Source: Lytechinus pictus
Taxonomy: Eukaryota
Length of the DNA stretch: 64,000 nt
Assembly: GCF_037042905.1 (NCBI RefSeq)
Contig: NC_087248.1
Location: 25,048,001 to 25,112,000, forward strand
Direction: 5' to 3'
The notes under the pieces were generated by a model that searched no databases, had not been told where the DNA came from, and was given only the letters and a program-made list of their open reading frames with translations. The position numbers were made by a program, and so were the translations under genes. Shown here in pieces: positions 109 to 64,000 of this stretch (position 1 is the stretch's first letter; the number at the start of each line of letters is the position of its first letter).

Positions 109-128
109 TTAGCATCATCTGCAAAGGT
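109..128 (+). pseudogene. Remnant 3' end of a deleted B-type repeat exon (LASSAK|GT)
   Basis: TTAGCATCATCTGCAAAG|gtat matches the end of exon B (TTAGCATCGTCTGCAAAG|gtat); it is fused directly to intron sequence homologous to ~5348-5447. Confidence 0.75.
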
Positions 129-214
129 ATATTTTACCTCTTCAAACCTATTTTTACCTTCTAATTATTGAAGGGATAAGCATATACTCATGATAGCGTA
201 TAATCATGATATAA

Positions 215-685
215 TCATGGTAAGTCTAAGCATACAGATGATTTCAATATATACTATAACAATCAATTAATTGAGAGACAGAATTCCGTGAAGTATTTAG
301 ATCTGATATTAAATAGTGATCTCTCATGTACATCTATGGTTGACTCTATTGTCAAAAAAGCTAATTCTCGCTTGAAATTTATATACCGGTACCAAAATTG
401 CATGAATACGAAATCCAGACGCATTTTAAGCTTTTCATTAATACAGTGTTTATTTGATTATGCTAATGCAGCATGGTACTGCAGTCTTGGAAAGGTTGAT
501 AAAAAAAGTTTATAATTATTTAAAATAAGATTGTTAGATTTATTACTTGCTTACACCCAAGAACACATGTTGGGAAGAATGAAATCGAAAAAGCTGGCCT
601 TCTTCGCATAGACTTGAGGTCGCAACAACTTATACTTCACCATGTTCATAAAATTTTCTATTCAAACGAATATCATTACATATAA
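215..685 (+). mobile_element. Decayed LINE fragment (CR1-group, C-terminal part of RT ORF)
   Basis: VKYLDLILNSDLS...IVKKANSRLKFIYR...LIQCLFDYANAAWY then NKIVRFI after a frameshift; absent from the paralogous intron at ~8170-8370. Confidence 0.75.
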
Positions 686-1325
686 AAAAAACATTGGTCC
701 AGTCATTTATTATGTAAACAAACAGCCGAAATGTTTGATTAGTGCTATCGATGTAAAAAAAACACAATAATTAAAAACGATTGGAAAAAAATTTGCTTTA
801 GCGCATTCTCTACATTACCCATATGAACCAAAATTTGTTTAGGGCAAAAAGCTCGTTTCATTTGTATTGTTCATGAGCATGGAAAATGAAAACAAGATTC
901 GCTTTTTCTCTCTGGTTCGTTTCTTTGCATTTGATTCATTGAAACTTTACATGTATATGCATTCGTATCTTATGAAATTATGATGTTGTCTAATCATCTT
1001 TAACATAATGATTTGTAATAAATGTACCTCACACAATGGCCCAAGAAGTGAAATTTGCGTCTACTGTTCAGTCAAAACTTTTATTTTTTTAAGTTTATAG
1101 CAATTTGCCACTATGCTTTATTTCTGTGTAATAAAAAATAATGTGATAAACACATCCAGAACTGAAGTTCATGAAGTTGATAGACCGTCCAACATTAACA
1201 ATAGTAGTATAGCAATCATTAATTTCAGTATGTTTTTAATGTGGTATTTTGATGGCGTACGAAATGAAGATTCTTAGGTTTATGATTTGATTGAAACAAG
1301 TATTGTGAGCACAGGACCCGTCGAG

Positions 1326-1615
1326 ATAATAATCATAATAATATGCATTTATATAGCGCCATCTATCTAGAAATAATCTAATCCGAGGCGCACTGTTTAT
1401 TATTATTATTATTATTACTCGACTTTAGCTAGAGCTACCTTTCAACGATCCGTGCGTTTGAGAAATTAATTCTGCCGTGTATCGATTCATGTTCCTCACT
1501 TGGGTTGGGTGCAGCTCAACGTGGATAAATTGCTTGCTGAAGGAAATAACGCCATGGCTGGGATTCGAACCCACGACCCTATGTTTCAAGGCTAATACAC
1601 TGGGTCACAACGCTC
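1326..1615 (-). mobile_element. tRNA-derived SINE
   Basis: Minus strand: GAGCGTTGTGACCCAGTG (A box)...GGTTCGAATCC (B box), CCTTCAGCAAG core, 3' GCGCTATATAAATGC plus (ATT)n tail. Confidence 0.8.
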
Positions 1616-2180
1616 TACATGTAAATTATTAGTACTTAAAATCCAACAATCGAATTCATTATAGTTTATTATGAAAATGTATTCAATAGTCAAGATATCA
1701 AATCATATTATGATTTCATTGGTGCCATTGTGTACAATGAACCACTTACAGTTCTTCCAATGCTTTGAAATTAAACAAATAAATCTATCAAAACCTAAGA
1801 ACCTTGCAAGAACATTTTTAATGTTAGTAACTCATAAAGCCCACGGTCCACCAAATAATTGCACTATAAAGGAGCATTAGTTTCATCTGACTAAAGGACT
1901 ATATTTCCCCTTAATTTTGTTTGTTTGTTTACGGTTAATAATCGTGCCGATACTTAAAAAAATACGGAGTGTGAAATGTTAGCAGATATGCAAAACACGA
2001 TTTCCTTTAAGATTTTCTATCATATAATATCATTTTTATTACCATGATTACAGCAATACTAGATTGGTGTGTTGTTTAGTGGATGATATTCGTGATAAAC
2101 TACATTTCTATATTCCCATTTCTGCATACGGATTAAAATACAATAACCTTGATTTCCTCTTTATGCTACTACTATATCAG

Positions 2181-2345
2181 ATTGAGATTCTTCATCACGA
2201 TGAGTATCTCATCAAACGTGCATCTGCATCACGTGATTTCGCTCAGTTCATCTGTAAGATGAATTATCTGAAGAACCTCACACTCGACGGTCAGTATCAT
2301 GATGACTTCTACTCAACATCATCGTCGATGGCATCAACTACAAAG
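2181..2345 (+). CDS. Repeat exon A1 (165 nt, 55 aa, phase 0-0), two LRR-like units: IEILHHDEYLIKRASASRDFAQFICKMNYLKNLTLDGQYHDDFYSTSSSMASTTK
   Basis: Acceptor ctactatatcag|ATT, donor AAG|gtaata; paralogous to the exons at 6471 and 9837, including splice context. Confidence 0.85.
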
Positions 2346-2534
2346 GTAATACATGTTAGGAGGTCTTTACATGTAAAAAGAGTAGAACTCACAAGCAAAC
2401 CATACAAGTTCTGATTTTTGTTCATGCTCCTCATTATGTAGCCATTAATTTGTATAATGGGGCTATGATGCCTCCTATAAAGCGAAATTGTTCATACCTT
2501 TACTGAATTATTATTCTGGTAAATTTTAATTGAT

Positions 2535-5500
2535 TCCTTCCCATATGTTTAGGGTAATCAAGAGGCACACCTGTTTGACGGTTAAATTAAACGAACCCTT
2601 AACACGTTGACATCCATAATGCATCCGTATAAGAATAATTTTACAAAAAAAAAATAGTAATAAATCTTTATGTATGCAGCACATATGCGATAAAACACGT
2701 TACATTCCGTCTCTGCATCATTAAATGCTATTTATATTTGTGTGTAGATATGTTTAGAAGTAATAGTTCCTTTAATTGTTTATTGCAGTGAACCTAAAAT
2801 GTAGAAACCGTCTTTCCCCTTGTTGAAAAGTATGCAGATATATATGCCCCTGTATATTGTATTAACATACGAAGACAATACAAATAATGACAGATGCGTC
2901 CAAATACTACACCAATACACTAAACTATGAACAAAGAGGTGTCATTCGAATAGTTTCATCAAATCTATTCTTTATCATTTTGTCTTTATCTTTTTTTGTT
3001 TAATTAAAAAACAAGCGATTTTAACGAAATTGAAATATAACTGAATATGAAATATTGCCAAACTGACCCATTATGGCAACCTGTGTATTCTGTTCCTTTA
3101 TTAACGTCGTACACTTTAATTTACACTAGACAGAATATAATTTGAATACATCAAGTAAACTCAGACAAAGAACACAATTTGTTCAAATAACCAGACCAGG
3201 AATAACGAAGTTTGCATTATGACATGTCTTCATGAATATGCAATGATCATGATGAGTATGCTCATTTTTATTGAATGAAATTATATTTATTCAAATATTG
3301 TCAGTCATATTCATTCAGTTTTGTCAATCATCAAATTTAAAAATTGAGCAATTGGTTGGTTCGAATGAATATATTTTGCCTGCCAGTTGTAATTAGACCC
3401 GTGCGACCATCCAGGCTTACAAGCTTACGAACTGTATGCAACAGTTTATGGATGAATGAATTTAATTTCGACGAAATATCGTGATGGATCAGAAACATCC
3501 TTAAAGAGAATGAAGCAAATATTCTCAAAGTCTTTTCACATTGTGAAAACCCATCTTGCTGGAGTCATGATAGTAAGCCTTAAACAAATAAAACCAAAAA
3601 CTGCAATATGTTTAATGCTTTTTCGACGACTTAAATGAAATCGAAATAACCAAACGCATTAAATTGACGATTGTACGGTGTGATTTCCATATATTTCTTA
3701 AGGGTAAATTTTATTTCCGCAAGTACTGTGTTCCGATTTATTTTAAACACACTACATTTCCTTTAGATATCAGCAAAGAAAGGTTTTTGGTATACATGTA
3801 TCTATTTCATTTCTTCCCAAATGCTTAGGGTAAAAAATCAAGTGGCACACTTCTTTGATGAGGAAAATGAAACCAATCTTTAACATGTTGTAATCCAGAA
3901 TGTATCCATAGAAAAATAATCAAGAAAATAAAAATTAATACTAAACCTTCGTTTATGGAGCACATATGCGATAAAACACGTTACATTTCGTCCCTGGATC
4001 ATTAAAGACCATTTCTATTTTTGGGTAGATATGTTACATGTAATGGTTTCTTTAATTGTTTATTAAAACGAACATAAATTGTAGAAACCGTTGTTTCCTT
4101 TTCCTTTGGTGAAAAGTGTGCAGATTATGTGCCTCTTTAATATTGTTTTAACAAACAAGGACAATACAAATAATTACAAACGTGTCCCTCTAGTAATGTG
4201 CATAATGCTTTAATACTACATTGAAATAATTAACTATGAACATAGAAGTGCCATTCGAATTGTTTCATCAAATCTATTCGGAGTCTGTCCCTTTTTTATT
4301 TAAAAAACAATTTGAACATGTTTGTACCTTCAAATGAAAAATCAAAATTTAAATGACACATAAACAAAATGACCGATTTGGGAAACCTGTTTAATCTGAC
4401 CCTTCATTATCGTCGTACTTTGCGCTGAATGCAATATATAGATAAAGCAAACTTTGACAAAGAACGCAATTTGATTATATAACCAGACCGGGAATAACGA
4501 AGATTGCAATATATTTGATGAAACAGTTTGAGGCATGTCTTCAATGAATATGCAAACAAACATGATAAAAACGCTCATTTCAAATCCCCACTTATCTTTT
4601 TTTTTTTTGAAACTACATTTATCAAATACTTTCAACCGCGAATGAACACAATTTAATTTGTGTACACTATTGCAACTGATTTTGTTGCAAGGGAGACATA
4701 CAGCATCCACGTGCTTTTGTTTGTTCTTGTTTTTAATCTTTGCCACAACTTTCTTCATCTTTCTGGCCCAATCCTCTCTCTGTATTTTCTATATCTTCTT
4801 TTAATTAGCCTTAGTTTCCCTTTACTCACCTTTTCTCTGTCTGTCTCCCTTTGCCGTCTCTATCCTTTCCCACCTGGCTTTCGACTAATACGAATACCGG
4901 TGTTGTTTCACACTTCTCTGGTGTGGACATAATATAGATTCCGGGCTGGTGTTAATCAACACCGGAGTTGTAAAAATCAAGCATGTTTTTATCCAACCTT
5001 TTCTTCACCTTGTGTCAATCATATTTTACGCTTTTGGTCTCATATGGAAGAGGAAAAGATGGATAATCGGTGTATAAAATTTGTTTTCCAAATAGATAGC
5101 AGTAAGAGCCAGAAAGCTCACTAAAAATTGCAATTTGCTCGTGCAAATTAAAGATTGGTAGCACCATTTCCATTGTTTTAGCTTAATTACGGTATCCCTC
5201 TTTTCTTGGACGCACTGTACTTCACCGTCCTTTCTGAATAATTAAAGACCATTAACATATTTATTTTAGATTTGTCGTAGGTCAGTAGGTAGTGGTTTAT
5301 CTTATTGTTTATTGAAATGAATTATTATTTGTCACTCTTTCCCTTGTTGACAAGTACGTATACAATAGAAACAAACGATGTTAGAACAAATGACAGACGC
5401 GTCCGTCTGGTAATGTACATTATGTCTAAAATATTACGTTCAAATAATAAACTATGAACCTGAAGGTGACATTGGAATATTATTTTTTGATCAAATATAT

Positions 5501-5900
5501 TCGGAGGCTGTTTCTTCTAATTTAAAACAAGCGATTTGAATATCCTTGTACCTTCAACTTTAATCGGCATTTAAATGAATATGACGTATTACCTAACTGG
5601 CTCACAATAAGGGTAACCTGTATGTTCTATTCCTTTATTAAGGCCGTGGTTCACGCTGAACGCAATATAATTTGAATTGATCAAGCAAACTCAGACAAAT
5701 AACATATTGTTAATTTGATTGAAATTACATGGAATAACAAAGATTGCATTACGTTTGGTGACAGAAACAGCTCAATACATGTCTTCATTAATATGCAATG
5801 ACCATGATGAGGACGCTTATGAAGTTATTTCACTTATTATGTTTTTTTATTGTATTAAATTATATTGATTCAAGTATTGTCAACCGTTGATGAACAAAAT
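2535..5900 (+). repeat. Three diverged copies of a ~0.7-0.8 kb intronic unit (~2535-3310, ~3815-4640, partial ~5235-5900)
   Basis: Shared blocks such as agcacatatgcgataaaacacgttacatt, aactatgaac, cagacaaagaac, ggaataacgaag. Confidence 0.7.
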
Positions 5901-6470
5901 ACTTTTTACAACACTGGTGTAATGTGTAAGATAAACCTTTTTTTTGCAACCAATTTCAATTACCCTAACGATTGCCAGCTGATATAGAACTATGCATAGA
6001 GATATATATAAAAAAATATAAATTTATAAAAACGCATGATATGGGCCGAAAATCCATTATTCTTGCGAGATGAATATGACCTTAGATGACTTTTTCATAG
6101 TCTTTTTTTTTACAGATTTCGAATATTTTTTATAAAGAATGCAAAACACCCGAATCACCATGCGGATTTAATAAATGACGCATCTACATGTAGCCACCGA
6201 CCATATTTTTCATTAAGAAAATAGGGCAAATTATTAGCCTTTGATTAGATAAACAATAACATGATTAAGAATAATTTTCTTTTCATTCTTAGTTGTTAGA
6301 GAAAATTACTGTGATTTTCATAACATTATGTGATCGAAGAGGATTAATTTCCAATGATTCGATGATCAAGGTTTGCTCATTTAACCGAATGTAGAATAGA
6401 GTTAATTTGCTCAATCAGACCCTTGTTTGATGTATTGTTTTATTTAAACATTATGTCACTACTATTCCAG

Positions 6471-6653
6471 ATTGAGCGTCTTGATATCAATTACATTGAT
6501 CTCGGTCCACGTCAGTCCGCATCACGTGATCTCGCTCAGTTCATTTGTAAGCTGACTCATCTCAGGGAACTTTACCTCGGTAATCAACTCTCCAGTCCCT
6601 CATTTCATGACGAGTTCTATTCAACGGTATCATCCTTAGCATCGTCTGCAAAG
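6471..6653 (+). CDS. Repeat exon B (183 nt, 61 aa, phase 0-0): IERLDINYIDLGPRQSASRDLAQFICKLTHLRELYLGNQLSSPSFHDEFYSTVSSLASSAK
   Basis: Acceptor ctactattccag|ATT, donor AAG|gtatct; shares SASRDLAQFICK and HDxFYST motifs with the A exons. Confidence 0.85.
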
Positions 6654-8054
6654 GTATCTTTTTAGTTTCTTATTTTCGTTTTCTTTACGTTTCAAAGCAT
6701 TTTCTTCCAAATAGTGCAATATGAAGTGATGAGGATATTCACTTTCTAAAAATGAAATTTGTCTAATGTTGTATACCAGAGGAATGATGTATTATTATAT
6801 AACGAACATGGTGCATAGGCATGAAGAGTTTGGCCCAATTTGTATTACTCTATAACATTCTTAATTATTATCATAATTATATTCATTTTTAAAGCTATAT
6901 TTTAATCCGTTATTTATTCCAGGGAACCGAGATGAACAAACTTTGCTTCAAAGCGGAATACCTTTTTGTTATGTATTTGTATTTCGCTTAAGTTTGTATT
7001 GTAATTTGTGTTAGAATTGAAATAGAAGCAGAATAAATTCAGTCAATTATTCAATCAATCGTGATAATCTTGATTTCACCTTGATCTTAGTCATCACAGA
7101 CTCCAGCCCGCAACAAAAAGGGTTTTTCTTCCCCATCCCGTGCAGCATTCAATGTCAGCCTACTGTCTGCTGTTTTGTTGGGGGAAAGAAATGCATGTAA
7201 TAAGTAGAAATCAAGCATGTTTTCATCCAACTTTTTTTTCTGAACCTTGCGTCGATCTTATTTTACGCGTTTGGTATAATAATTGGAGTATGACATTTGT
7301 TTTAGAAATAGATAGCAGTAAAAGCCAGAAAAACTCACTCAAAATCGCTCGTGCAAATTAAAGATCGGTAGCACCATTTTCCATTGTTTTAACTCAGTCA
7401 TGCGTGTGTTATATAAATATTGAGGTGAATATCAAATGAAGTAAATCATATCATTCCATTTATGTCCATTTCATGAAGCAAATTAATGATTCTAATGGCG
7501 CAAATTACACTTAATTCCGGTGTCCCTCTTTACTGGAACGCACTGTACTGAACATTTTCCTTCCTGAATAATTAAGGACCATTGAGATAAATTATTTATT
7601 TTAGATATGTTTCCAGCTGATATAGAAATATAAATATAAATATAAACAAAAACATCAACCATTTTTAAGAAGGCGTTACATAGGACGAAAATATATTTTT
7701 TTAGATGAATGTGACCTTAGATGTCTTTTTCAATGTCTTTCAGATTTTGAATAAATTATTGTGTATAAAGTATACATAACACCCGAGTCACCATGCGTAT
7801 TTAATGAATGATGCATCTACATGTAACTCCGATCAGATTTGCTTTATTAAGAAAAAAGGGCAAATTAACATCCTTTGATTAGATAATAATTAGTATGATT
7901 AAGAAAAAAATCTTTTCATTCATAGTTATTGGAGAAAATTTCTGTAATTTTCATAACATTATGTGATCGACGAAGAGTAATTTCCAATAGGTCGATGATC
8001 CAAGTTTGTTCATTCAACTGAATATACATGTAGATTAGAGTTCAACGGTTTATT

Positions 8055-8110
8055 CAGGCCCTTGTTTGATGACGTATTTTGGTTTCTTCATCAAAGGTAT
8101 ACTTTTACCT
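8055..8110 (+). pseudogene. Second deleted B-type exon; only upstream intron and donor (CAAAG|gtatac) remain
   Basis: 7610-8070 matches the intron upstream of exon B (to cccttgtttgat), then jumps to aaag|gtatacttttacct, whose downstream sequence matches 122-185. Confidence 0.65.
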
Positions 8111-8980
8111 TTTCATTTCTTTAAATTGTTATTTTTTCTTTCTAATTATTGCAACATCAAGGGATAAGCATATTATAATGATAATCTTGGTTTCGTTTTA
8201 ATCATGATGAATTTGATTTAATATTACCTTAATTTTGTGTGTGTGTGTGTTTTGAAAAATATATTTAGTTTACAAATTAAAAGGTGTTTTGATAAAGGCA
8301 ATTTTCTTTTAAAACTTATTATACATGTAGAGCCATCAAGATGGATACACTACACTATTTGAAATGACAAACATTAGTCCAGTCAATTATTATGTGAAAA
8401 CAAAAACAAAACAAAACACAAATGTTTGATAAATGCTTTCGATGTAAAAGCCCTGATAATAATTAAAAACGATCGATGGAAAAGTACTTTGTTTTAGCGC
8501 ATTATCTACATTATGCATCTGAACTCTCATTTCATTTACATGAAAAAAATCGTATTTTGTCTCAGGTTCATTTCTTTGCATTTAATAGTTTCATTGAAAC
8601 GTCACATATACATGTATATGCATTCGTTTCTTATAAAGTTATGATGTTGTCTAGTCTTCTGCATAATGATTCGTAATGAATGTAATTTAGACAATGACCC
8701 AAGAAGCGAAATTTGCGTCTACTGTTCAGTCAAAACTTTTATTTGTTATACTTCATATCAATTCGCCAGTATGGTTTATTTCTGTATCATAAAACATAAT
8801 GTGATAAACACATCCAGAACTGAAGTTGCTTAATAAACTCGTCCAACATTAACAATAGTCTATAGTATAGCCATCATTAATTTCAGTATGTTTTTGTGGT
8901 ACTTAGATGGCGTATGAAATGAAAATTCTTCGGTTTATAATTTGAATGAAAAAAGCATCGTGAGCACAGAACCGTCTACA

Positions 8981-9263
8981 TAATAATTATAATAATTGGC
9001 ATTTATATAGCGCCATCTATCAAGACATAATCTAATCCGAGGCGCACTGTTAATTGTTATTATTATTATTACATCGGCTTTAGCTAGAGCTGCCTTTCAG
9101 CGCTCAGTGCGTTTAAGAAAATTAATTCTGCCGTGTATCCATTCATGTTCCTCACTTGGGTTGGGTGCAGCTCAACGTGGATAAATTGCTTGCTGAAATT
9201 GCATGGCTGGGATTCGTACCCAGACCTTTTGTTTCAAGACTAATATATTGGGCCACAACGCTC
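8981..9263 (-). mobile_element. tRNA-derived SINE, same insertion as 1326-1615 copied with the exon unit
   Basis: Same sequence and same flanks as the 1326 copy. Confidence 0.8.
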
Positions 9264-9836
9264 TACATGTAAATTATTAGTACTTATAATCTAACGATAT
9301 TATTCATTGTTTCTTATTCGAATTCATTATAGCATATTATGAAAATTTATTAAATAATTAAGATATCAAATCATATGATTTAATTGGTGCCATTGTGTAT
9401 ACAATAAACCAGTAACAGTTCTTCCAATGCTTTGAAATTAATCTATCAAAACCTAAAAACCTTGCAAGAACACTTTGAATGTTAGTAACTCAAAAAGCTT
9501 GGCACCAAAATATTATGCTATAACCAAACATTTGTTTCATCTGACTAAAATGACTATATATTTCACCTTAAGTTTTTATTGTGTATTTTCAGTTAATAAT
9601 CGGGCCGATACTTTAAAAAATACGGAGTGTTGTATGTTAGCAGATATGCAAAACGCGATTCCGATTAAGATTTTCTATTATGATAACATTTTTATTACCA
9701 TTATTACAGCCATACTAGATTGGTGTGTTGTTTTGCAGATGATATTCATGATAAATTTGATTTTAATACTCCCATTTCTGTCAACGGATTAATGTACAGT
9801 AACCTTGATTACATCTTTATGTTACTATTATATCAG

Positions 9837-10001
9837 ATTGAGACTCTTGATCACAATGATCATCTCAGTGAACGTCCGTCTGCATCACGTGATCTCGCTC
9901 AGTTCATCTGTAAGATGAATCATCTGAAGAACCTCACACTCTACGGTCAGTATCATGATGTCTTCTACTCAACAGCATCGTCGATGGCATCAACTGCGAA
10001 G
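9837..10001 (+). CDS. Repeat exon A2 (165 nt, 55 aa, phase 0-0): IETLDHNDHLSERPSASRDLAQFICKMNHLKNLTLYGQYHDVFYSTASSMASTAK
   Basis: Acceptor ctattatatcag|ATT, donor AAG|gtaaca; 148/165 nt identical to exon A1 by hand count. Confidence 0.85.
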
Positions 10002-10124
10002 GTAACATATGTTGGGAGGTTTTACATGAAAAAAGTAGTACAAGGAAACCATACAATTTTTTTAGTGTGATAATCCTCATTCTATTGACAATGAAGTTGT
10101 CTAATGAGGCTATGATTAACTGTA

Positions 10125-10894
10125 GAGTGCGTCCCACAAAAAACGAAACCGAGATTTAGCGATGATTTATCATACCTTAATCATAAATACAATAGACAAA
10201 TGACCTATCAATGTAAAGCTTAGAATCTCCTCTTTCCTGTGATATTACTTAGATTATTCATTATTCATGCATGAGTGAGCAAACAAAATTGAAGAAAGGA
10301 TGCCAAAAACTCATTTGACGGGGGGTATCTGAATTTCCAAAAAAAGTCACATGCCTCACAAGTTCAATATCCGCTCTTTTATTTGATACCTTAATCACAA
10401 AAAAATGATCAAGAAGTAAGAAAGTTATGGTCCATCGAAACAATGCTTGTATTTCCATAGTTTCATTAAATAAACGTGTTTTCACCGGTTTCCAACAGAA
10501 GCTATCGCACGGTTTAACAAAACGGAGTGTCGAGTGAGTTTGAATGCTTGCCTGTAAATCCTCTTAATTTTATGAGATTATTGAAATTCAAGCCTTATTT
10601 CAAATGACCAGAACTTTGTTATTTCTTGACCATTTTCTAAAATTGAGGTATCAAATTAAAGAGCAGATATTGAACTTTTTAGAAATGTGGTTTTCCTTTT
10701 GTAACCCAGATAGAGCCCGCAAAATGACTTTTTGGTATCCCCTCTTCAAATTGTTTTTGCTCACTCATGCATGAATGATAAAAATCTAAGTAATTTCAGA
10801 TGAAAGAAGGGATTCTAAGCTTTACAATGGTAGGTCATTGTCTATTGTATTTGTCATCGATAAATCTCGGTTTCGGTTTTTGTGGGACGCACTG
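10125..10894. mobile_element. Tc1/mariner-type MITE with ~300-bp imperfect TIRs and TA target duplication
   Basis: TA|(G)AGTGCGTCCCA...TGGGACGCACTG|TA; empty site in the paralog at ~2476 (cctataaagcgaaattg); sister copy at 58129-58942. Confidence 0.85.
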
Positions 10895-11984
10895 TATAAA
10901 GCGAAATTGTTCATATCTATACCGAATTGTTATTATATCAATTGTCAATTAATAGTAGCCATAAACCAATTGTATAAATGTTTCGGAAATTGTTTCCATT
11001 TTCGTTAAAGAATCTAGGACAAATGAGTAGGGGATTTGTGCCCCCTTATTTTATTATTGAGCTCTACCAAATGATACATAATGAACTGATGATATAAGCA
11101 TAATGCAATGAGATATATGTGTTTTTTCCTATTAATTTTCGAATCGTATTGTGTTTTGATGAGAGCTTTTTAATGCAATGGAAAACTTGCAATTTTTGGA
11201 GGTTTGCATAGCAATTAATCAACCCTTTTTATCTAAAGCTAAATTTATTTTGAAAGCACATCGAGTGTTACAACTGATTAACCCATTAACCTATTTTGCA
11301 TTACTAGTATAATCATTATGTTTCACATGACGAATAGGCCTGTATGTTTTTATCCAAAGTTGTTATCTAAATTTACTTTAGGATAAACTTACACTTCGTG
11401 ATGCAGATTAAGGTTTAAAATGTATAGCAGATTAAAACAAACATTGTTTTGTGCGGGGTTTATAGCAAAATGAATTTTCCCAAAGTGTGGTGCGTGACAT
11501 TTTCGTTATGGTCCTACTCTATATAAATCAAATTCTCTTTTTCTTACCTCGGTATTGGGATCTGTGAAATAGATTTCTTTAACATTTAAATGGGTTTTTT
11601 TTTATTCTAATTTTGATTTCAGGTGTTATAATTAAACTACAATCTTGATACACTAGGGGGCATATCAGGCTCAAAAGAGATGAAGATTACTTTTACTTAA
11701 ATTCATTTATATGAGGAATTCGTCGGCATAGTAAAAAATGAACATCAGAGTACAGATGAAAATCACAGCATGATTGTTTTTTTATTACAAAGGCAAAAAA
11801 AATTATTCGCTGCTTTCAATCTATCGCTGTTTTTTTTTGGCCTCTCTTTCCACGCTCGGCCCCCTCAAAATATTTGGTTCATTCAACCACTGAATGTGAT
11901 TGCACTGATGAATGTACTAGGGTGTGGAGTAGAAATGTGTTATTTCTTCTAGCCATACTGAGCCCGCATACCATTTTACTGCAC

Positions 11985-12640
11985 TTCGAATGGTTACATT
12001 GAATGAAAATAGAAAATCAAACGAGCTTTCTATTTCGTTTCCAAAACTGGATGTCAAATGATATTTTGCTTAAATTCATAAAGTAGTTATGTACACATTT
12101 TGATTATCATGCAGATGAGGAAACCGATGAAGTCACCCATTTACAATTGTATTTTGATATATTTCTCCTCATGTAAATCAAAGTTTGATTTGTCTCTAAT
12201 CAATGTAAATTGCCATTGTTGTAACGTCATTGTGTTTTGATGTAGAGTCTCTGGACTGTAAAAGTATTTTTTTTTAAACAAGTGTACATCTAGTTACCAA
12301 TAATGCATATAGCATTTCCATTTATTTGAAAGCAGGATAAAAGAGCATTGTAGATTAAATGCCTTGCTCACGGGCATAGGTGCCGCGGCCGGGGATCGAA
12401 CCCTGGACTTCCCATGTATAGTCAGGCGCCTTAGACCACTCGGCCACGGCACCTACAAAAATAAAATGAAAATATTGTTTAATTAAAACAAGAAAATACA
12501 AAATGGACAGCGAATTAGGAGCATCGACTACATTGTTTGCATATTGCTATGCACAATCTGTTTTGTGAAAAAATAAACAAATTTTTTAGTGCCATAACTT
12601 TCTAAATTTTGTATGAAACCATCAGTGCTCCTACTTTTTT
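11985..12640. mobile_element. Old degenerate relative of the TTAA MITE family at 47110/50393, interrupted by a SINE
   Basis: Patchy similarity (gatgaggaaaccgatgaagtcacccat, gcatcgac, ttttgtgaaaaaataa, gccataacttt) to the reverse complement of that family. Confidence 0.4.
12315..12453 (-). mobile_element. tRNA-derived SINE 5' part with well preserved Pol III boxes
   Basis: Minus strand GGTGCCGTGGCCGAGTGGTCTAAGG...GGTTCGATCCCCGGCCGCGGCACC followed by CCCGTGAGCAAGGCATTTAATC SINE core. Confidence 0.8.
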
Positions 12641-13217: not shown

Positions 13218-13594
13218 GATGAATGCAACACAAGCTCAAATGTGACTGATCTGACCGTTACTAATAGGACACTAAAAGGATGGCAGGATTGTGGATCGAT
13301 GTTTGACATTGTGAAGAGGTTCACCATAGAGGTATGGGGCAGGATCATATGTGACGTCTTCCAGAGGATCCATCTACCAGCAGCGACAGAGCTCACCGTT
13401 CAAGCATACGAGTATGATTGGGAACCGGCTTCTCTCCGCGATGATCCCACCTCACTACCCAATGCTCTCCTCAAGGTCTCATCTCAGCTTGTCAAGGTCA
13501 CATTCACAGATCTCAACATAGGTAACGACAAGACCGAACGCATCATTCAAGCTTTCAGATCAACACCCGATCTCAAACATCTGAGGATCCTAAG
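13218..13594 (+). CDS. Unique exon C (377 nt, phase 0-2): DECNTSSNVTDLTVT...PDLKHLRILR, degenerate LRR-like C-terminal region
   Basis: Acceptor tctcatctattgtag|GAT, open frame matching ORF 13242..13619, higher GC than flanks, donor CTAAG|gtatga. Confidence 0.8.
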
Positions 13595-14344: not shown

Positions 14345-14446
14345 ATTCATACGATGTGGGACTGATGAGAGATTAGATCGTTCTAGTATTGATTCCGATG
14401 ATGAACATAGGATAACGGTGGAGATAGATCATGGCAAACCAGTTGG
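14345..14446 (+). CDS. Exon D (102 nt, phase 2-2): (R)FIRCGTDERLDRSSIDSDDEHRITVEIDHGKPVG
   Basis: Pyrimidine tract and ctattag|A acceptor, phase matches exon C, strong donor GG|gtaagt (read-through would give GGG TAA). Confidence 0.7.
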
Positions 14447-19444: not shown

Positions 19445-19463
19445 TGAGTACTTTCGAGGATGA
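19445..19463 (+). CDS. Probable terminal coding exon E: (G)EYFRG-stop, followed by 3' UTR
   Basis: Strong pyrimidine tract tctctctcttctctcacacaccactatacag|T, phase 2 compatible with exon D, TGA at 19461-19463. Confidence 0.5.
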
Positions 19464-32900: not shown

Positions 32901-33535
32901 TGCAGAAATAATGACACCAGTTTTCACTGGAATCTTCAACCAATCATTGAAGGAGGGGAAATTACCAGCTGACTGGCTAACAGCAAACGTCTGTCCTCAG
33001 TGTATTCAAGAAGGGTGAATAATCACTTACTGTACACTATAGGCCTGTATCTTTGCCATCAATTCCTTGCAAATTACTGGATCATATAATATTTCATATT
33101 ACATTATCATGGCACATATCGATAACCACTCAATTTTGAAAAAAATTCACCATGGCTTTTTAAAAGCCCATTCTTGTGAGACCCAGCTTATAAACACAGT
33201 TGAAGAAATCATGCGTTGTCTCGACTCTGTTCCTGGTAGTCAGGTAGACATGCAGATCCTATATTTTAGTAAAGCTTTTTATGCTGTGTCGCATCGAACA
33301 CTCCTGCGTAAAATAAATCATTATGGGATACAGGATTCGACCCTTCGATGGATTGGCACTTGGCTTACTGCTCGTAGTCAACAAGTCATTGTAGATGGAG
33401 AAAAATCCCAACCGATCCCTGTCACCTCCGGTGTGCCGCAAGGGACCGTTCCCGGCCCCTTTTATTTCTTCTTGTACATCAACGACATTGGAAATCAATT
33501 TAGTGCAGAAACAAGGATTAAATTATTCGCTGACA
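29925..33535 (+). mobile_element. Decayed CR1-clade LINE: 5' UTR, two PHD fingers, AP endonuclease, reverse transcriptase (many frameshifts and deletions)
   Basis: CxxC...CDLCDKWYHIGC...WYC and CDHCDKWYHIQC...WFCASC; LVNCRSL...ASESHL (APE); HGF...SCETQL, FSKAF, SGVPQGTV, FAD (RT). The 5' boundary is approximate. Confidence 0.85.
30384..30731. mobile_element. Non-autonomous DNA element with CCCGGG-poly(G) terminus inserted in the LINE 5' UTR; left end lost
   Basis: Right end GACTGCCCCCCCCCCCCCGGG; CGTTAGA repeated on both sides; same terminus type as 47872-48401. Confidence 0.55.
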
Positions 33536-33544
33536 ATTTTATCT

Positions 33545-33885
33545 TCGATCTCGAAATGTGGTCTTATCCGATGTGCCGAATATTATGGAAACAAAGGAAA
33601 TCGAACGGTGATGTCCCGAAACTCATGGATCTCACACGGAAAGAAAGATTAATATTGATCCAGGAACGCAAACTCTCATATGATGACCATACCAGGAGAC
33701 ACGAATCTTTGCCAAATAGAAATTAAGGAACAATAGGGAGGAGGAGAAAAAGGAAAAGCTTGCTTGAGAATATTGAGGAGTTGACAGGCAGAAAGACGTA
33801 TGTATGCTGTGAGATAGCGCTGGACAGAGACAGATGAAAAACCATTACATCCAACCTCTTTAAGGAGAAGGAACAGCAGAAAGGC
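33545..33885 (+). mobile_element. RTE-clade LINE 3' fragment
   Basis: LEMWSY..CRILWKQRKSNGDV...IQERKLSY..HTRR...GRRRKRKSLLENIEELTG...ALDRDR resembles the RTE C-terminal pattern (FEMWCYRRML.ISW...GHI.R...RGRP...W..NI..WTG...A.DR..W). Confidence 0.7.
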
Positions 33886-60045: not shown

Positions 60046-63000
60046 TTTTGATTTGATTTGATTTATTTATTTTCCGTTTCACAATTGTACATAATATGAT
60101 AAACATAACATAAAAAGGTCGAAAATACTACAAGACAAAATATAATATATATAACATAATCATAGATTTAAGGAACACAATTCAGTAAATAAAGATATCT
60201 CAAATGACATTTGTATTTAAAAGTAAAACGGAGGGTCTTGCCGAAAAAAGCAAAGCTTGTACAAGAGACAAGCCCCTATCTTAGTTACATTACAAAATTA
60301 CAACAAATAAATATTGGGTCTTAATAATAATTTTGTTTAAAAATAAATACAAACAATTTTTGTGCACTTGACAAAAACGTAACTGATGGATCGTGAGAAA
60401 AAAATTACGTTTTACAATATTATAAGAGAGGGGGAGGTGAGGGGGGAAGACAGGAGGGACAGATGAGTGCAGTACACTAAGTAGAAAGAATGAAGAAGGC
60501 GGGCAGCAGGAGCAGGTACTTTGGCTAATTGCAATTTTAAGAAGAAAATAATTAAACGAATAATATACATGACTATGTATATAACATGAGCGCATATAAT
60601 ACGCATATACACAAAAGTCGAGTATGATTAAATTAGTTATTCAGCTTGACCTGTTTGCGACGAGTATTGCAGAATTAACATTTTTTCAGTTTGCGGTTAA
60701 AAATATTTACATTGGGGGATTCTTTGAAATCTTGAGGCAGAGAGTTCCAGTAGGCAGGCCCAGAGAAGACAAATTAATTCTTTGCAAATAAAGTTCTTTT
60801 TAAAGGGAGATGGTAATATTGTCGTTGCCTTGTTGGGTAGCAGTGTACGAATGTATTTTTACGGAACATATTAGAGAAAAAGGCGGGAAGGTCGTCCTTG
60901 CTTAATTTGAACATAAATTGACTAAGTTCGAAAAGATACATGTCACTTACTTTAAGAATGTTATTTTCAAAAAATAAGATATCAGTATGTGATCTAAAGT
61001 GTGTTTGAAAAATTATTCTTAGAGCTTTTTTCTGAAGAAGTAATATTCTATTTAGTTGTGTTTATATTGCACATCCCCAGGCAATAATTCCATAATTAAT
61101 ATATGGTAGAATAAGGGTGTAATATAATGTTAACAAAGTGCGGGAAGGGAGAAAATGTTTGAGTTTATTAATAATTCCAATGTTTCTAGAAATTGTTTTA
61201 TATATACTATCGATATGAGGCTTCCAGGATAATTTGTCGTCAATAAGGACACCCAAGAATCTGGTAGTGGAAACATTATTAAGAACGAAATTATCAAAGA
61301 AAATACTGTCAGGTAGAGTATTGATTTTGTTGCTGAAAAGCATGTAGTTTGTCTTCTGGTGATTAAGCGAAAGTTTGTTGGCCTTGATCCAATCTGTAAC
61401 ATTTGTTAGTTCAAAATTTACGATTCTAACGAGTTGGTTAATATTGTCATGGGAAAAGAAAATATTGGAGTCGTCAGCAAAAAGTATAAATGAAAGTAAA
61501 TTTGATGTATTTTTAATATCATTGATGTAAGTAATAAAAAGAAGTGGGCCTAATAGGCTACCCGGTGGGACAACGCAAGTAATTGGAAGAGTAGTCGAAT
61601 TGCTATTATTTACTGATACAAATTGGGTCCTATCAGTGAGGTAACTCCTGAACCACTCCAAGGCCTTCCCTCTAACTCCATAATGACACAGTTTATGAAG
61701 GAGAATTTCATGATTTATAGTGTCGAAGGCCTTGGAGAAGTCCAGGAAAATACCGACAGTATGACAACTATTATCGATGGAAGTGGTGACTTTATTAATA
61801 AATGACAGAATAGCATGGGAAGTACTATGGTTTTTACGGAATCCAAATTGGAAGTTTGAAAAAATGTTGTGTAATTTGAAAAAATCACTTGTTCTAATAT
61901 GGACAAGTTTTTCTAGAATTTTAGATAGTGAAGTTAGTAAGGATATTGGACGATAGTTGGAAACGAGTTGGCTATCACCTTTTTTTAACAGTGGGATGAC
62001 TTTGGAGATTTTCATTTTATTAGGGACCCGTCCAGTGCTAAGAGAGATATTAAAGATATGTACCAATGGATCAACGATGGCTGTAATGATTTTTTTTAGA
62101 AGAAAGTTGGGTATACCGTCATACCCCGGGCTTTTATAATTCTGTTAATTGCTAACAATATTAATGATTTCCATCGAAGTAGTAGGATTAAAAAACATGG
62201 AATTGGGGTTAGGGTCGTCAAGGAAATCGGAAAAGGATTTGTTAGTTCGAGGTATATTTTTAGCCAAGTTGTTGCCAACATTTGAAAAATATGAATTGAA
62301 CTCTCCTGTGATTATATTAGTGTCGTCTGTGATAGTATTGTTTGATTTTATTTTTGTGATTGTAGAGCTTTTTATCTTTTTGTTCAGTACATTATTAATA
62401 ATCTTCCAAGTATTTTTCATATCATTTTTGTAAATGTTTAATTGGGAAGTGTAGTAATCCTTTTTGGCTATACGTAATAATGTGGTAAGGGTGTTTTTAT
62501 AACAAGTGTACTTAGAACGAGAGTTTTCGCTTGGTTTAGAAATATATTTATAATAAAGATTATTTTTACGGTTAATAGATCGTAAGATAGATTTAGTAAT
62601 CCACGGATGTATTGGGATGTTTTTATAATTTGACTTTCGGTTGGTGATAAGAGGGACGTGGGTGTCTAGAGAAGATGTTAATTTGGTAATAAAAGAGTCG
62701 TAAGCTACATCAACATCTGTGGAGTAAAAAATGGTCGACCAGTCTGTATTGTCTAAATCATTAATTAAATGGGAAATGTTATCATCGGTTATTTTACGAT
62801 AGGAAGTATTATATGATTCATTCTTAGAAAGTTTATTTTTAGACAACTTCGCAAAAATTGAAAAGTGATCAGAAATATCGCTAAGGACTATACCAGCTTG
62901 GGGGGTAGGATATGTTACATTACTAAAAATATTATCTATAATAGTTGCAGAAGTGTTAGTTACTCTCGTTGGTTTAGTAATTAGTGGTAAGAAAGAATTA

Positions 63001-64000
63001 GTCAGAAACGTTTCGAGAAACTCTTGCGAGATATTGTTAGTGTTGCAATTCATTAAATTGATGTTGAAATCCCCCATAAAGAAACAATCTTTGTTTTTCA
63101 GAAAAGGATTGAGTAAAAAGTCATTGAGGGTTTCCAGAAAATGTTGAGTATTTGAATTAGGAGGTCGGTATAAAACTCCCAGTATCAGATTTTTTCCTTT
63201 TGGATTGATGATTTCAACAAAGAGTGATTCTAAAGTGTCATTGGATAAAGTCATATTATTTATAAGATTATATTCGTATTGCTGGGGTATATAAAGCGCA
63301 ACACCACCACCGGGTCTTACAGTTCTGTTGTTAACAACTATATTAAAATCGGAGAGTGCAAAAAGAGAACAAGGATTTTCCGAGAACCACGTTTCAGTTA
63401 ATCCAATGATTGAATATTTCGGAAACTGATTATTATCAAGAAATAATTTTAACTTATCGAAATTTTTCTTGGCACTACGAATATTTAGATGGAGAAGAAA
63501 AATATCTTCTTCAAGACTGCTAGAATTAATTAAAGATTTAAAATGTTGTTCTGTAAAATACTGTGAAGTAATAAGCTGTCCACATGGGTCATTTGGGTCA
63601 AAGTTTGAGTTAAGATCAGCAGTATTATCATTCAGGTAGTTTTTTATATAAGTATCAAAATAGGGGTTTTCTGACGAAGCGCCGTGTTGTGATGAAAGGG
63701 ACAACAGGTCATCGTTGCATAACGAGCTGAATGGAAAGTCAGACAAATCAGCCGTCGGAGCTGGGAAGAATTACACTAGATACGCTAAAAGAGTAGACAC
63801 GCCGCCATGCTCCTGCTCCTGTTGCTGTGCAAGAAGAGGGAAACAGAAGAAATGAAAGTATGCTGTGCAAGAGAAAAAGACAATACAAGTTTAAAGGAAG
63901 AAAAGTAAAATGGGAAGAGAAGAGATAAGAAACCCGAACCAGACCAGACACGAGAACGATCATTACTAATGTAATATGTGAATGATATAATAACTGAAAA
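60046..64000 (-). mobile_element. Near full-length CR1-group (L2/Crack-like) LINE; 5' end probably beyond the window
   Basis: APE plus RT reading frame, 3' UTR with ACAAGCTTTGCTTT stem-loop, AATAAA and (TCAAA)n tail. Confidence 0.85.
60640..63746 (-). pseudogene. LINE APE-reverse transcriptase ORF (~1030 codons) interrupted by in-frame TAA stops
   Basis: HLNIRS, GLTETW, YRPP, GDFN, PTRVT, SDH (APE); NYRPISLL, QFGFR, LDFSKAFD, FADD (RT). ORFs 62145..63746 and 61062..62066 are in one frame; stops at 62145, 61062, 60774. Confidence 0.9.

What the first reader, a model, noticed from the sequence alone, without database searches (positions are those of the whole stretch)
109..10001. Modular LRR exon-cassette array undergoing birth and death in a probable immune receptor
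Seen: three homologous exons (165, 183, 165 nt) all begin ATTGAG, end AAG|GT and are phase 0-0, so any one can be skipped, duplicated or deleted without a frameshift. They sit in duplicated intron units, and two further copies have been deleted. Each exon encodes two ~26-32 aa LRR-like units. Established: vertebrate NLRP genes encode LRRs in symmetric two-repeat exons, and sea urchins have greatly expanded NLR families. Inference: the locus could diversify recognition specificity through unequal crossover between intron repeats and through cassette splicing.
Basis: partly seen in the sequence, partly recalled or inferred. Interest (0 to 1): 0.78.

Follow-up and report, generated by a model that had tools for sequence, protein, structure and literature searches.

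The report
Sea-urchin NLR gene's modular LRR exons
The three look-alike exons are real, already-annotated coding exons of a Death-NACHT-LRR innate-immune receptor gene of the sea urchin Lytechinus pictus. Each encodes two leucine-rich repeats in a frame-neutral cassette, and the array is visibly reshaped by duplication, deletion and recent gene conversion, which is an ordinary pattern for an expanded NLR family.

Summary
Exons at 2181-2345, 6471-6653 and 9837-10001 are homologous, start AG|ATTGAG, end AAG|GT and are phase 0-0. Two dead exon tails lie at 109-126 and 8081-8096.

The exons belong to RefSeq gene LOC129258778 of Lytechinus pictus (XP_063954785.1). Its Death and NACHT exons lie 11-14 kb upstream of the window, and its C-terminal exons lie at 13218, 14345 and 19445.

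An AlphaFold2 model (pLDDT 87) shows two strand-helix LRR units per cassette. Its best structural matches are NLRP9 and ribonuclease inhibitor.

The gene sits in a 2.3-Mb NLR cluster. Paralogs there carry from about 2 to at least 14 such cassettes.

Turnover is visible in three ways: an old intragenic block duplication, copied and re-cut exon remnants, and a 5.4-kb tract (6850-12250) that is 99.5% identical to a paralog 127 kb away, while the flanks are 65-90% identical.

Cassette skipping is annotated in paralogs but not for this gene. Expression of the three exons is only weakly supported, by one A2-to-next-exon junction contig. There is no clear positive selection.

Modular two-LRR exons and sea-urchin NLR expansions are already known. 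This scan also noted similar arrays elsewhere in this genome (s1-317521, s1-327720). Interest is low to moderate.

The parts
109..126 (+). Remnant 1: last ~18 nt of a B-type LRR exon, followed by a GT donor. Its upstream junction differs from the other remnants.
   Evidence: Alignments. A 34-nt match to the tail of a paralog B exon.
219..690 (.). Young interspersed repeat inserted in the intron
   Evidence: at least 40 copies at 96-98% identity on many chromosomes.
2181..2345 (+). Cassette exon A1, 165 nt, phase 0-0, two LRR units (residues 1043-1097 of XP_063954785.1)
3409..4872 (+). Intron segment copied from the intron upstream of exon B0. It is 95.7% identical over its first 1 kb and absent from the paralog's equivalent intron.
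   Evidence: the sequence is found only inside this NLR cluster.
6471..6653 (+). Cassette exon B1, 183 nt, phase 0-0, two LRR units
8081..8096 (+). Remnant 2: exon tail plus GT donor. The acceptor and about 165 nt of exon are deleted. Two paralog copies have the same junction.
9837..10001 (+). Cassette exon A2, 165 nt, phase 0-0, two LRR units
   Evidence: A junction contig joins it to 13218.
6850..12250 (.). Tract 99.5% identical to the paralogous gene 127 kb upstream, with flanks only 65-90% identical: recent gene conversion or non-allelic recombination
13218..13594 (+). Exon C1, 377 nt: C-terminal non-cassette LRR region
14345..14446 (+). Exon C2: C-terminal cap (FIRCGTDERLD...)
19445..19463 (+). 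Last coding mini-exon (..EYFRG, stop) of the RefSeq model

Best explanation
The three exons are cassette exons of one intact, annotated NLR gene of Lytechinus pictus, LOC129258778. The exon order is: N-terminal exon, an exon with a 2A-like motif, Death domain, NACHT, first LRR exon (177 nt), B0, A1, B1, A2, then three C-terminal exons.

Each cassette is a frame-neutral module that starts at the first residue of a beta strand and encodes two ribonuclease-inhibitor-type LRR units. Adding, losing or skipping a cassette therefore lengthens or shortens the horseshoe without breaking the frame or the fold.

The unusual B-A-B-A order comes from an old duplication of a block made of a B exon, a dead exon and an A exon. 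The dead exon had already lost its acceptor and most of its body before that duplication.

Rearrangement is still going on. Intron pieces have been copied within the gene, a sister gene keeps one more B exon, and a 5.4-kb tract that includes exon A2 was recently homogenised with that sister gene.

Shown here: the gene structure, the domains, the fold, the paralog variation and the recombination tracts. Inferred from the NLR family: the protein is a cytosolic innate-immune sensor whose LRR surface senses a ligand or holds the NACHT domain inactive, with Death-domain signalling after oligomerisation.
For: - Exons and frames.
- The RefSeq protein contains the exact translations of all three exons in the predicted order: (P0281).
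- NACHT and Death domains.
- LRR fold, with two strand-helix units per cassette. Best structural matches are NLRP9, ribonuclease inhibitor and NLRP3.
- Family cluster and variable cassette numbers.
- Block duplication and remnants.
- Comparison with the paralog.
- The 99.5% tract.
- A contig that joins the end of A2 to 13218. Its 30 downstream letters match this gene exactly and differ from the paralog at 3 positions.
Against: Two rRNA-depleted RNA runs, sampled at about 6% each, gave no reads on B1 and almost none on A2. RNA-like contigs over A2 in run X1 carry letters of other family members (9937A, 9961A). The run that holds the junction contig is of unknown type.

Pfam LRR models barely see the repeats: LRR_14 scores 26.9 bits against a cut-off of 40. 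The introns are 3-4 kb and full of repeats, whereas sister genes have introns of about 0.9 kb, which could mean relaxed constraint. The 99.5% tract could in principle be an assembly artefact.
Confidence: 0.88

Rival explanations
1. The LRR part of this gene copy is decaying. The cassettes are open by inertia, but the gene mainly makes Death-NACHT-only products or nothing.
For: No raw RNA reads fall on B1 or A2 in two runs. Many family members have annotated isoforms that stop by read-through just after the NACHT exon. The introns are long and invaded by repeats. An earlier scan note on another array reports a copy that shows no sign of using its exons.
Against: All 12 coding exons are open with canonical AG/GT sites. 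RefSeq models both isoforms with all cassettes. There is a gene-specific A2-to-C1 junction contig. RNA-like runs hold 43-63% of the NACHT exon's words.
Confidence: 0.1
2. This gene itself uses regulated cassette skipping to make several receptor isoforms. That is the reader's strongest functional claim.
For: The phase 0-0 modules allow it. In the same cluster, LOC129259285 isoform X2 lacks two of four intact B exons present in the genome. L. variegatus LOC121414360 isoforms X2-X5 differ by whole cassettes. Human NLRP3 does this (PMC6642158).
Against: The two RefSeq isoforms of this gene have identical LRR exons. No skipping joint was seen, although coverage was far too low to tell. Isoform models over near-identical repeated exons can be mapping artefacts.
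Confidence: 0.3
3. The differences between cassettes are driven by positive selection on ligand-contacting residues.
For: All 14 codons that differ between A1 and A2 change the amino acid. Family variability is concentrated at exon positions 3, 5, 7-9, 12, 36 and 38, which lie in or just after the two beta strands.
Against: NG86 dN/dS is 1.3 for A1 versus A2 on only 17 differences. The family-wide value is 0.76. At the post-hoc variable codons it is 0.97, with dS also high. Gene conversion mosaics confound pairwise dN/dS.
Confidence: 0.3

Closest known systems
Human NLRP3 and other NLRP LRR exons (Hoss et al. 2019, PMC6642158)
   Same: Frame-neutral exons that each encode two RI-type LRRs, with the exon border at a fixed place relative to the beta strand. 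This modularity permits exon skipping. The structure model's best matches are NLRP9, NLRP3 and ribonuclease inhibitor.
   Different: The exons here are 165 or 183 nt (29+26 or 29+32 residues) rather than 171 nt (28+29). The effector domain is Death, not pyrin. There is no sequence-level LRR match in Pfam. Alternative splicing is not shown for this gene.
Expanded Death-NACHT-LRR family of Strongylocentrotus purpuratus (Hibino et al. 2006, cited in PMC3879445; Roulston et al. 2016, PMC4981915)
   Same: Same domain order. Clear homologs: 67-70% NACHT identity to S. purpuratus proteins. A 2A-like D(V/I)ExNPGP motif lies ahead of the Death domain. Large clustered family.
   Different: Different species. 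I found no published description of the cassette exon structure or of its turnover in sea urchins; that was only a limited literature search.
Zebrafish NLR-B30.2 family (Howe et al. 2016, PMC4852459)
   Same: Hundreds of clustered NLR genes, LRRs each on single exons, shaped by amplification, exon shuffling and gene conversion.
   Different: The fish genes end in a B30.2 domain and have other N-terminal domains. The expansion is independent.

Membership tests
Animal NLR (NACHT-LRR STAND NTPase) | NACHT domain with Walker A and Walker B motifs | tested here: met
   PF05729 scores 78-80 bits against a cut-off of 26.7. GEGGVGKTT and LVLDGLDE are visible.
Animal NLR (NACHT-LRR STAND NTPase) | C-terminal leucine-rich-repeat solenoid | tested here: met
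   AF2 model pLDDT 87, pTM 0.87, with alternating strand-helix units. Foldseek matches NLRP9 at E 3e-10 and ribonuclease inhibitor at E 1e-9. Pfam LRR_14 is below its cut-off.
Animal NLR (NACHT-LRR STAND NTPase) | N-terminal death-fold effector domain | tested here: met
   PF00531 Death scores 30.6 bits against a cut-off of 22.6 on P0281. The exon is mapped at window -14032..-13763.
Animal NLR (NACHT-LRR STAND NTPase) | All domains on one transcript | tested here: inconclusive
   The RefSeq models join them. One contig supports the A2-to-C1 junction. No read-level evidence links the NACHT exon to the cassettes.
Animal NLR (NACHT-LRR STAND NTPase) | Role in innate immune sensing | not testable with these tools
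   Inferred from the family only.
Modular two-LRR exon architecture (as in NLRP genes) | Exon length a multiple of 3 with phase 0-0 borders | tested here: met
   Lengths are 165, 183, 165, plus 177 and 183 upstream. All 48 family copies are multiples of 3.
Modular two-LRR exon architecture (as in NLRP genes) | Each exon encodes two LRR units with the border at a fixed structural position | tested here: met
   DSSP gives two strands and two helices per cassette. The first strand begins 0-2 residues after the exon start in B0, A1, B1 and A2.
Modular two-LRR exon architecture (as in NLRP genes) | Alternative inclusion of cassettes | tested here: inconclusive
   Absent from this gene's two RefSeq isoforms. 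Present in paralog models. Read depth was too low to judge.
Sea-urchin NLRs with a 2A-like recoding motif | D(V/I)ExNPGP motif ahead of the Death domain | tested here: met
   LLLRSGDVEPNPGP in exon 2. Recoding activity was not tested.

The most novel reading that the evidence does not exclude
Echinoid NLR clusters might run a germline cassette economy. In it, near-identical two-LRR exons are shuffled between genes by frequent gene conversion and unequal crossover, and intact cassettes are then variably skipped at splicing. Individuals and cells would express combinatorially different receptor horseshoes. That would be an innate counterpart of repeat-assembly systems, and it could be tested at this locus and its 99.5%-identical sister tract.
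Probability: 0.15. Interest if true: 0.6.

Novelty: new member of a known kind. Interest (0 to 1): 0.3.

Why it matters
The locus shows, in a non-vertebrate deuterostome, the same frame-neutral two-LRR exon module that underlies alternative splicing of human NLRP3. It also gives a concrete, dated example of how such arrays change: a dead exon copied by block duplication, intron pieces moved within the gene, and a 5.4-kb conversion tract between paralogs. This is useful for annotating the very repetitive sea-urchin NLR clusters and for comparative immunology. It does not reveal a new kind of system.

Tried and rejected
1. Pfam on the single exons found nothing usable: LRR_4 at E 0.0085 on one exon only. 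The LRR nature had to be shown by structure.

2. I first took A2 for the terminal exon, because homolog P0123 ends by read-through after its last cassette. I rejected this when a contig's loose end led to exon C1 at 13218 and the RefSeq protein confirmed C1-C3.

3. I suspected separate 156-162-nt 'X-type' exons from partial hits. They are ordinary B exons aligned only in part.

4. I suspected that exons B1 and C1 evolve faster than their introns: 86% and 84% against about 94% region-wide. I rejected this because the identity profile shows a sharp boundary of a 99.5% tract instead.

5. Positive selection is not supported by dN/dS.

6. Expression: two raw-read RNA runs gave no exon reads, and the X1 contigs over A2 come from paralogs.

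7. The 1-kb intron duplicate is not a dispersed transposon; it occurs only inside this cluster.

8. The protein search did not flag the window's own protein. I recognised it by exact exon translations.

9. I did not try a complex prediction, since I make no binding claim.
Full report
**Observation.**
Reading the window and translating confirms three exons on the + strand: 2181-2345 (165 nt), 6471-6653 (183 nt) and 9837-10001 (165 nt). Each follows an AG, begins ATTGAG, ends AAG and is followed by GT. Each is open in frame 1, so all are phase 0-0. They are 55-75% identical as protein (tblastn E 1e-16 to 1e-24), and nothing else in the 64-kb window resembles them. I call the 165-nt type A and the 183-nt type B.

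**Where the window lies.**
The window is C4:25048001-25112000 of an 812-Mb assembly. A search of the whole genome with exon A2 found at least 111 copies. All but one lie on C4 between 23.79 and 26.1 Mb, typically in runs spaced about 0.9-1.1 kb apart. A search with the NACHT profile found about 15 NACHT exons in the same interval. One is at C4:25034936, on the + strand, 13 kb upstream of the window.

**Gene model.**
- The upstream open frame carries NACHT (E 2.5e-22) with Walker A and B motifs.
- Homologous proteins map three further intact exons upstream: an N-terminal exon, an exon with the motif LLLRSGDVEPNPGP, and a Death-domain exon.
- Between NACHT and the window lie a divergent first LRR exon (177 nt, window -8128..-7952) and a B exon (B0, -2480..-2298).
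- Downstream, a contig's loose end after position 10001 matched 13219-13245 exactly. This revealed exon C1 (13218-13594), followed by C2 (14345-14446) and a mini-exon at 19445-19463.
- The RefSeq protein XP_063954785.1, 'uncharacterized protein LOC129258778 isoform X2' (P0281, 1378 aa), contains the exact translations of all these exons in this order.
- Isoform X1 differs only by 273 extra N-terminal residues.
- Pfam on the whole protein gives Death and NACHT above their cut-offs, and LRR_14 below its cut-off.

The finding is therefore part of an annotated Death-NACHT-LRR gene.

**Fold.**
An AlphaFold2 model of residues 925-1378, built with 15 homologs, has mean pLDDT 87 and pTM 0.87. Each cassette (B0, A1, B1, A2) holds two strands and two helices, and the first strand starts 0-2 residues after the exon border. 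Foldseek against the PDB puts bovine NLRP9 first (E 3e-10). Ribonuclease inhibitors, NLRP14, NLRP2, NLRP7 and NLRP3 follow.

**Birth and death of cassettes.**
- *Block duplication.* Self-comparison shows that window 886-2469 matches 8540-10116 at 84%, and that -5173..-2209 matches 3409-6745 at 86-96%. The B-A-B-A order therefore reflects duplication of a block of about 8-9 kb.
- *Dead exon remnants.* Between B and A in each block lies a dead exon. At 8081-8096 the intron sequence upstream of a B-type exon runs to about 25 nt before where the acceptor would be, then jumps to the last 17 nt or so of the exon and its GT donor. The sister gene (NACHT at C4:24875754) has two remnants with the identical junction. 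This points to one ancestral deletion that was later copied. The remnant at 109-126 has a different upstream junction and a tail closer to an intact B exon, so it was rearranged again.
- *Differences from the sister gene.* The sister gene carries one more B exon (B, B, A, B, A against B, A, B, A).
- *Intron copying.* The intron between A1 and B1 holds a 2.7-kb insert absent from the sister gene. Part of it is a 95.7% copy of the intron upstream of B0. That sequence occurs only in this cluster, so it is not a dispersed transposon.
- *Variation across the cluster.* The hits per gene range from about 2 to at least 14. These are lower bounds.

**Recent exchange between paralogs.**
Overall the two sister genes are 80-91% identical. 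From window 6850 to 12250, however, they differ at only 28 of about 5,390 aligned positions (99.5%). The borders are sharp: identity is 80-90% before the tract and 65-84% after it. The tract includes remnant 2 and exon A2, which has one difference. I read this as recent gene conversion or non-allelic recombination. A mis-assembly is the alternative, and I could not exclude it. This result also removed my short-lived idea that exons B1 and C1 evolve faster than their introns.

**Cassette splicing.**
For this gene, the two RefSeq isoforms have the same cassettes. In the same cluster, LOC129259285 has four intact B and four intact A exons in the genome, but isoform X2 (P0275) contains only two of the B exons. 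In L. variegatus, isoforms X2-X5 of LOC121414360 differ by the presence or absence of whole cassettes. These are gene models, not experiments, and repeated exons invite mapping errors.

**Expression.**
RNA-like runs hold 43-63% of the sampled words of this gene's NACHT exon. I laid four runs on 4150-10149:
- The two raw-read RNA runs, sampled at about 6% each, gave no reads on B1 and almost none on A2.
- Contigs of run X1 cover A2, but they carry the letters of other family members.
- Run X15, of unknown type, has one contig that joins an A-exon end to the start of C1. Its 30 downstream letters match this gene exactly and differ from the sister gene at three positions.

Splicing of A2 to C1 therefore has some support. 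A1 and B1 have none beyond the RefSeq model.

**Selection.**
A1 and A2 differ at 17 nucleotides in 14 codons, and all 14 change the amino acid. This confirms the companion note s1-306859. However, NG86 gives dN 0.117 and dS 0.090, which is not a significant excess. Among 35 distinct A exons, variability concentrates at positions 3, 5, 7, 8, 9, 12, 36, 38, 47 and 54, mostly in or just after the two strands. Family dN/dS is 0.76, and it is 0.97 at those post-hoc chosen codons. Given the conversion mosaics, these numbers neither show nor exclude diversifying selection.

**Comparison with what is known.**
- Hoss et al. 2019 (PMC6642158) describe strict exonic modularity of human NLR LRRs: 171-bp exons, two LRRs each, the border at a fixed point of the beta sheet, and skipping of NLRP3 exon 5.
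- Howe et al. 2016 (PMC4852459) describe zebrafish NLRs with LRRs on single exons, shaped by amplification, exon shuffling and gene conversion.
- Large sea-urchin NLR families with Death-NACHT-LRR order, and their 2A-like motifs, are published (PMC3879445; PMC4981915).
- A profile of the cassette finds only 134 proteins among 1.84 billion representatives. The named relatives retrieved in the other protein searches are all sea-urchin proteins, so the repeat variant looks narrow.
- Earlier notes of this scan describe similar arrays elsewhere in this genome.

**Verdict.**
The object is an annotated member of a known family that works on a known principle. I rate it a new member of a known kind, with interest about 0.3.

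Noticed in passing
Upstream of the window: window -15098..-14925 (C4:25032902-25033075): Exon 2 of the gene encodes LLLRSGDVEPNPGP, a 2A-like ribosome-skipping motif just ahead of the Death domain. Such motifs are described for S. purpuratus NLRs (PMC4981915). Here the motif lies about 285 residues into the protein rather than at the N-terminus.
   Followed up: partly
window 219-690: A repeat of about 472 bp with at least 40 copies at 96-98% identity spread over many chromosomes, so probably a recently active non-autonomous mobile element. It sits in the intron just after exon remnant 1.
   Followed up: partly
window 10126-10893: A palindromic element in the intron directly after exon A2, with arms of about 670 nt at 76% identity flanked by 40-nt inverted ends at 95%.
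   Followed up: no
window 61065-63746 (-) and 33067-33723 (+): Open frames with an APE-type endonuclease and a reverse transcriptase (RVT_1, E 8.5e-36), i.e. a non-LTR retrotransposon. A second reverse-transcriptase fragment lies at 33 kb.
   Followed up: partly
Family proteins P0001, P0002, P0004, P0014, P0016: Many RefSeq models of this family end a few codons after the NACHT exon by reading through its donor site. That gives Death-NACHT proteins with no LRR at all. This gene's NACHT exon has the same read-through frame (…HRKVVNNNPHTNALGIQRSNV, stop).
   Followed up: no
window 4750-5150 and 8950-9150: Two intronic repeats, one with a tRNA-like stretch near 9180-9240, are very abundant in RNA runs: summed contig depth is in the thousands, with reads on both strands. 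The surrounding intron is silent.
   Followed up: no
P0297 residues 1-273 (isoform X1 of this gene): Isoform X1 starts with a second copy of the N-terminal exon, about 70% identical to the first. The 5' end of the gene therefore also holds a duplicated module.
   Followed up: no
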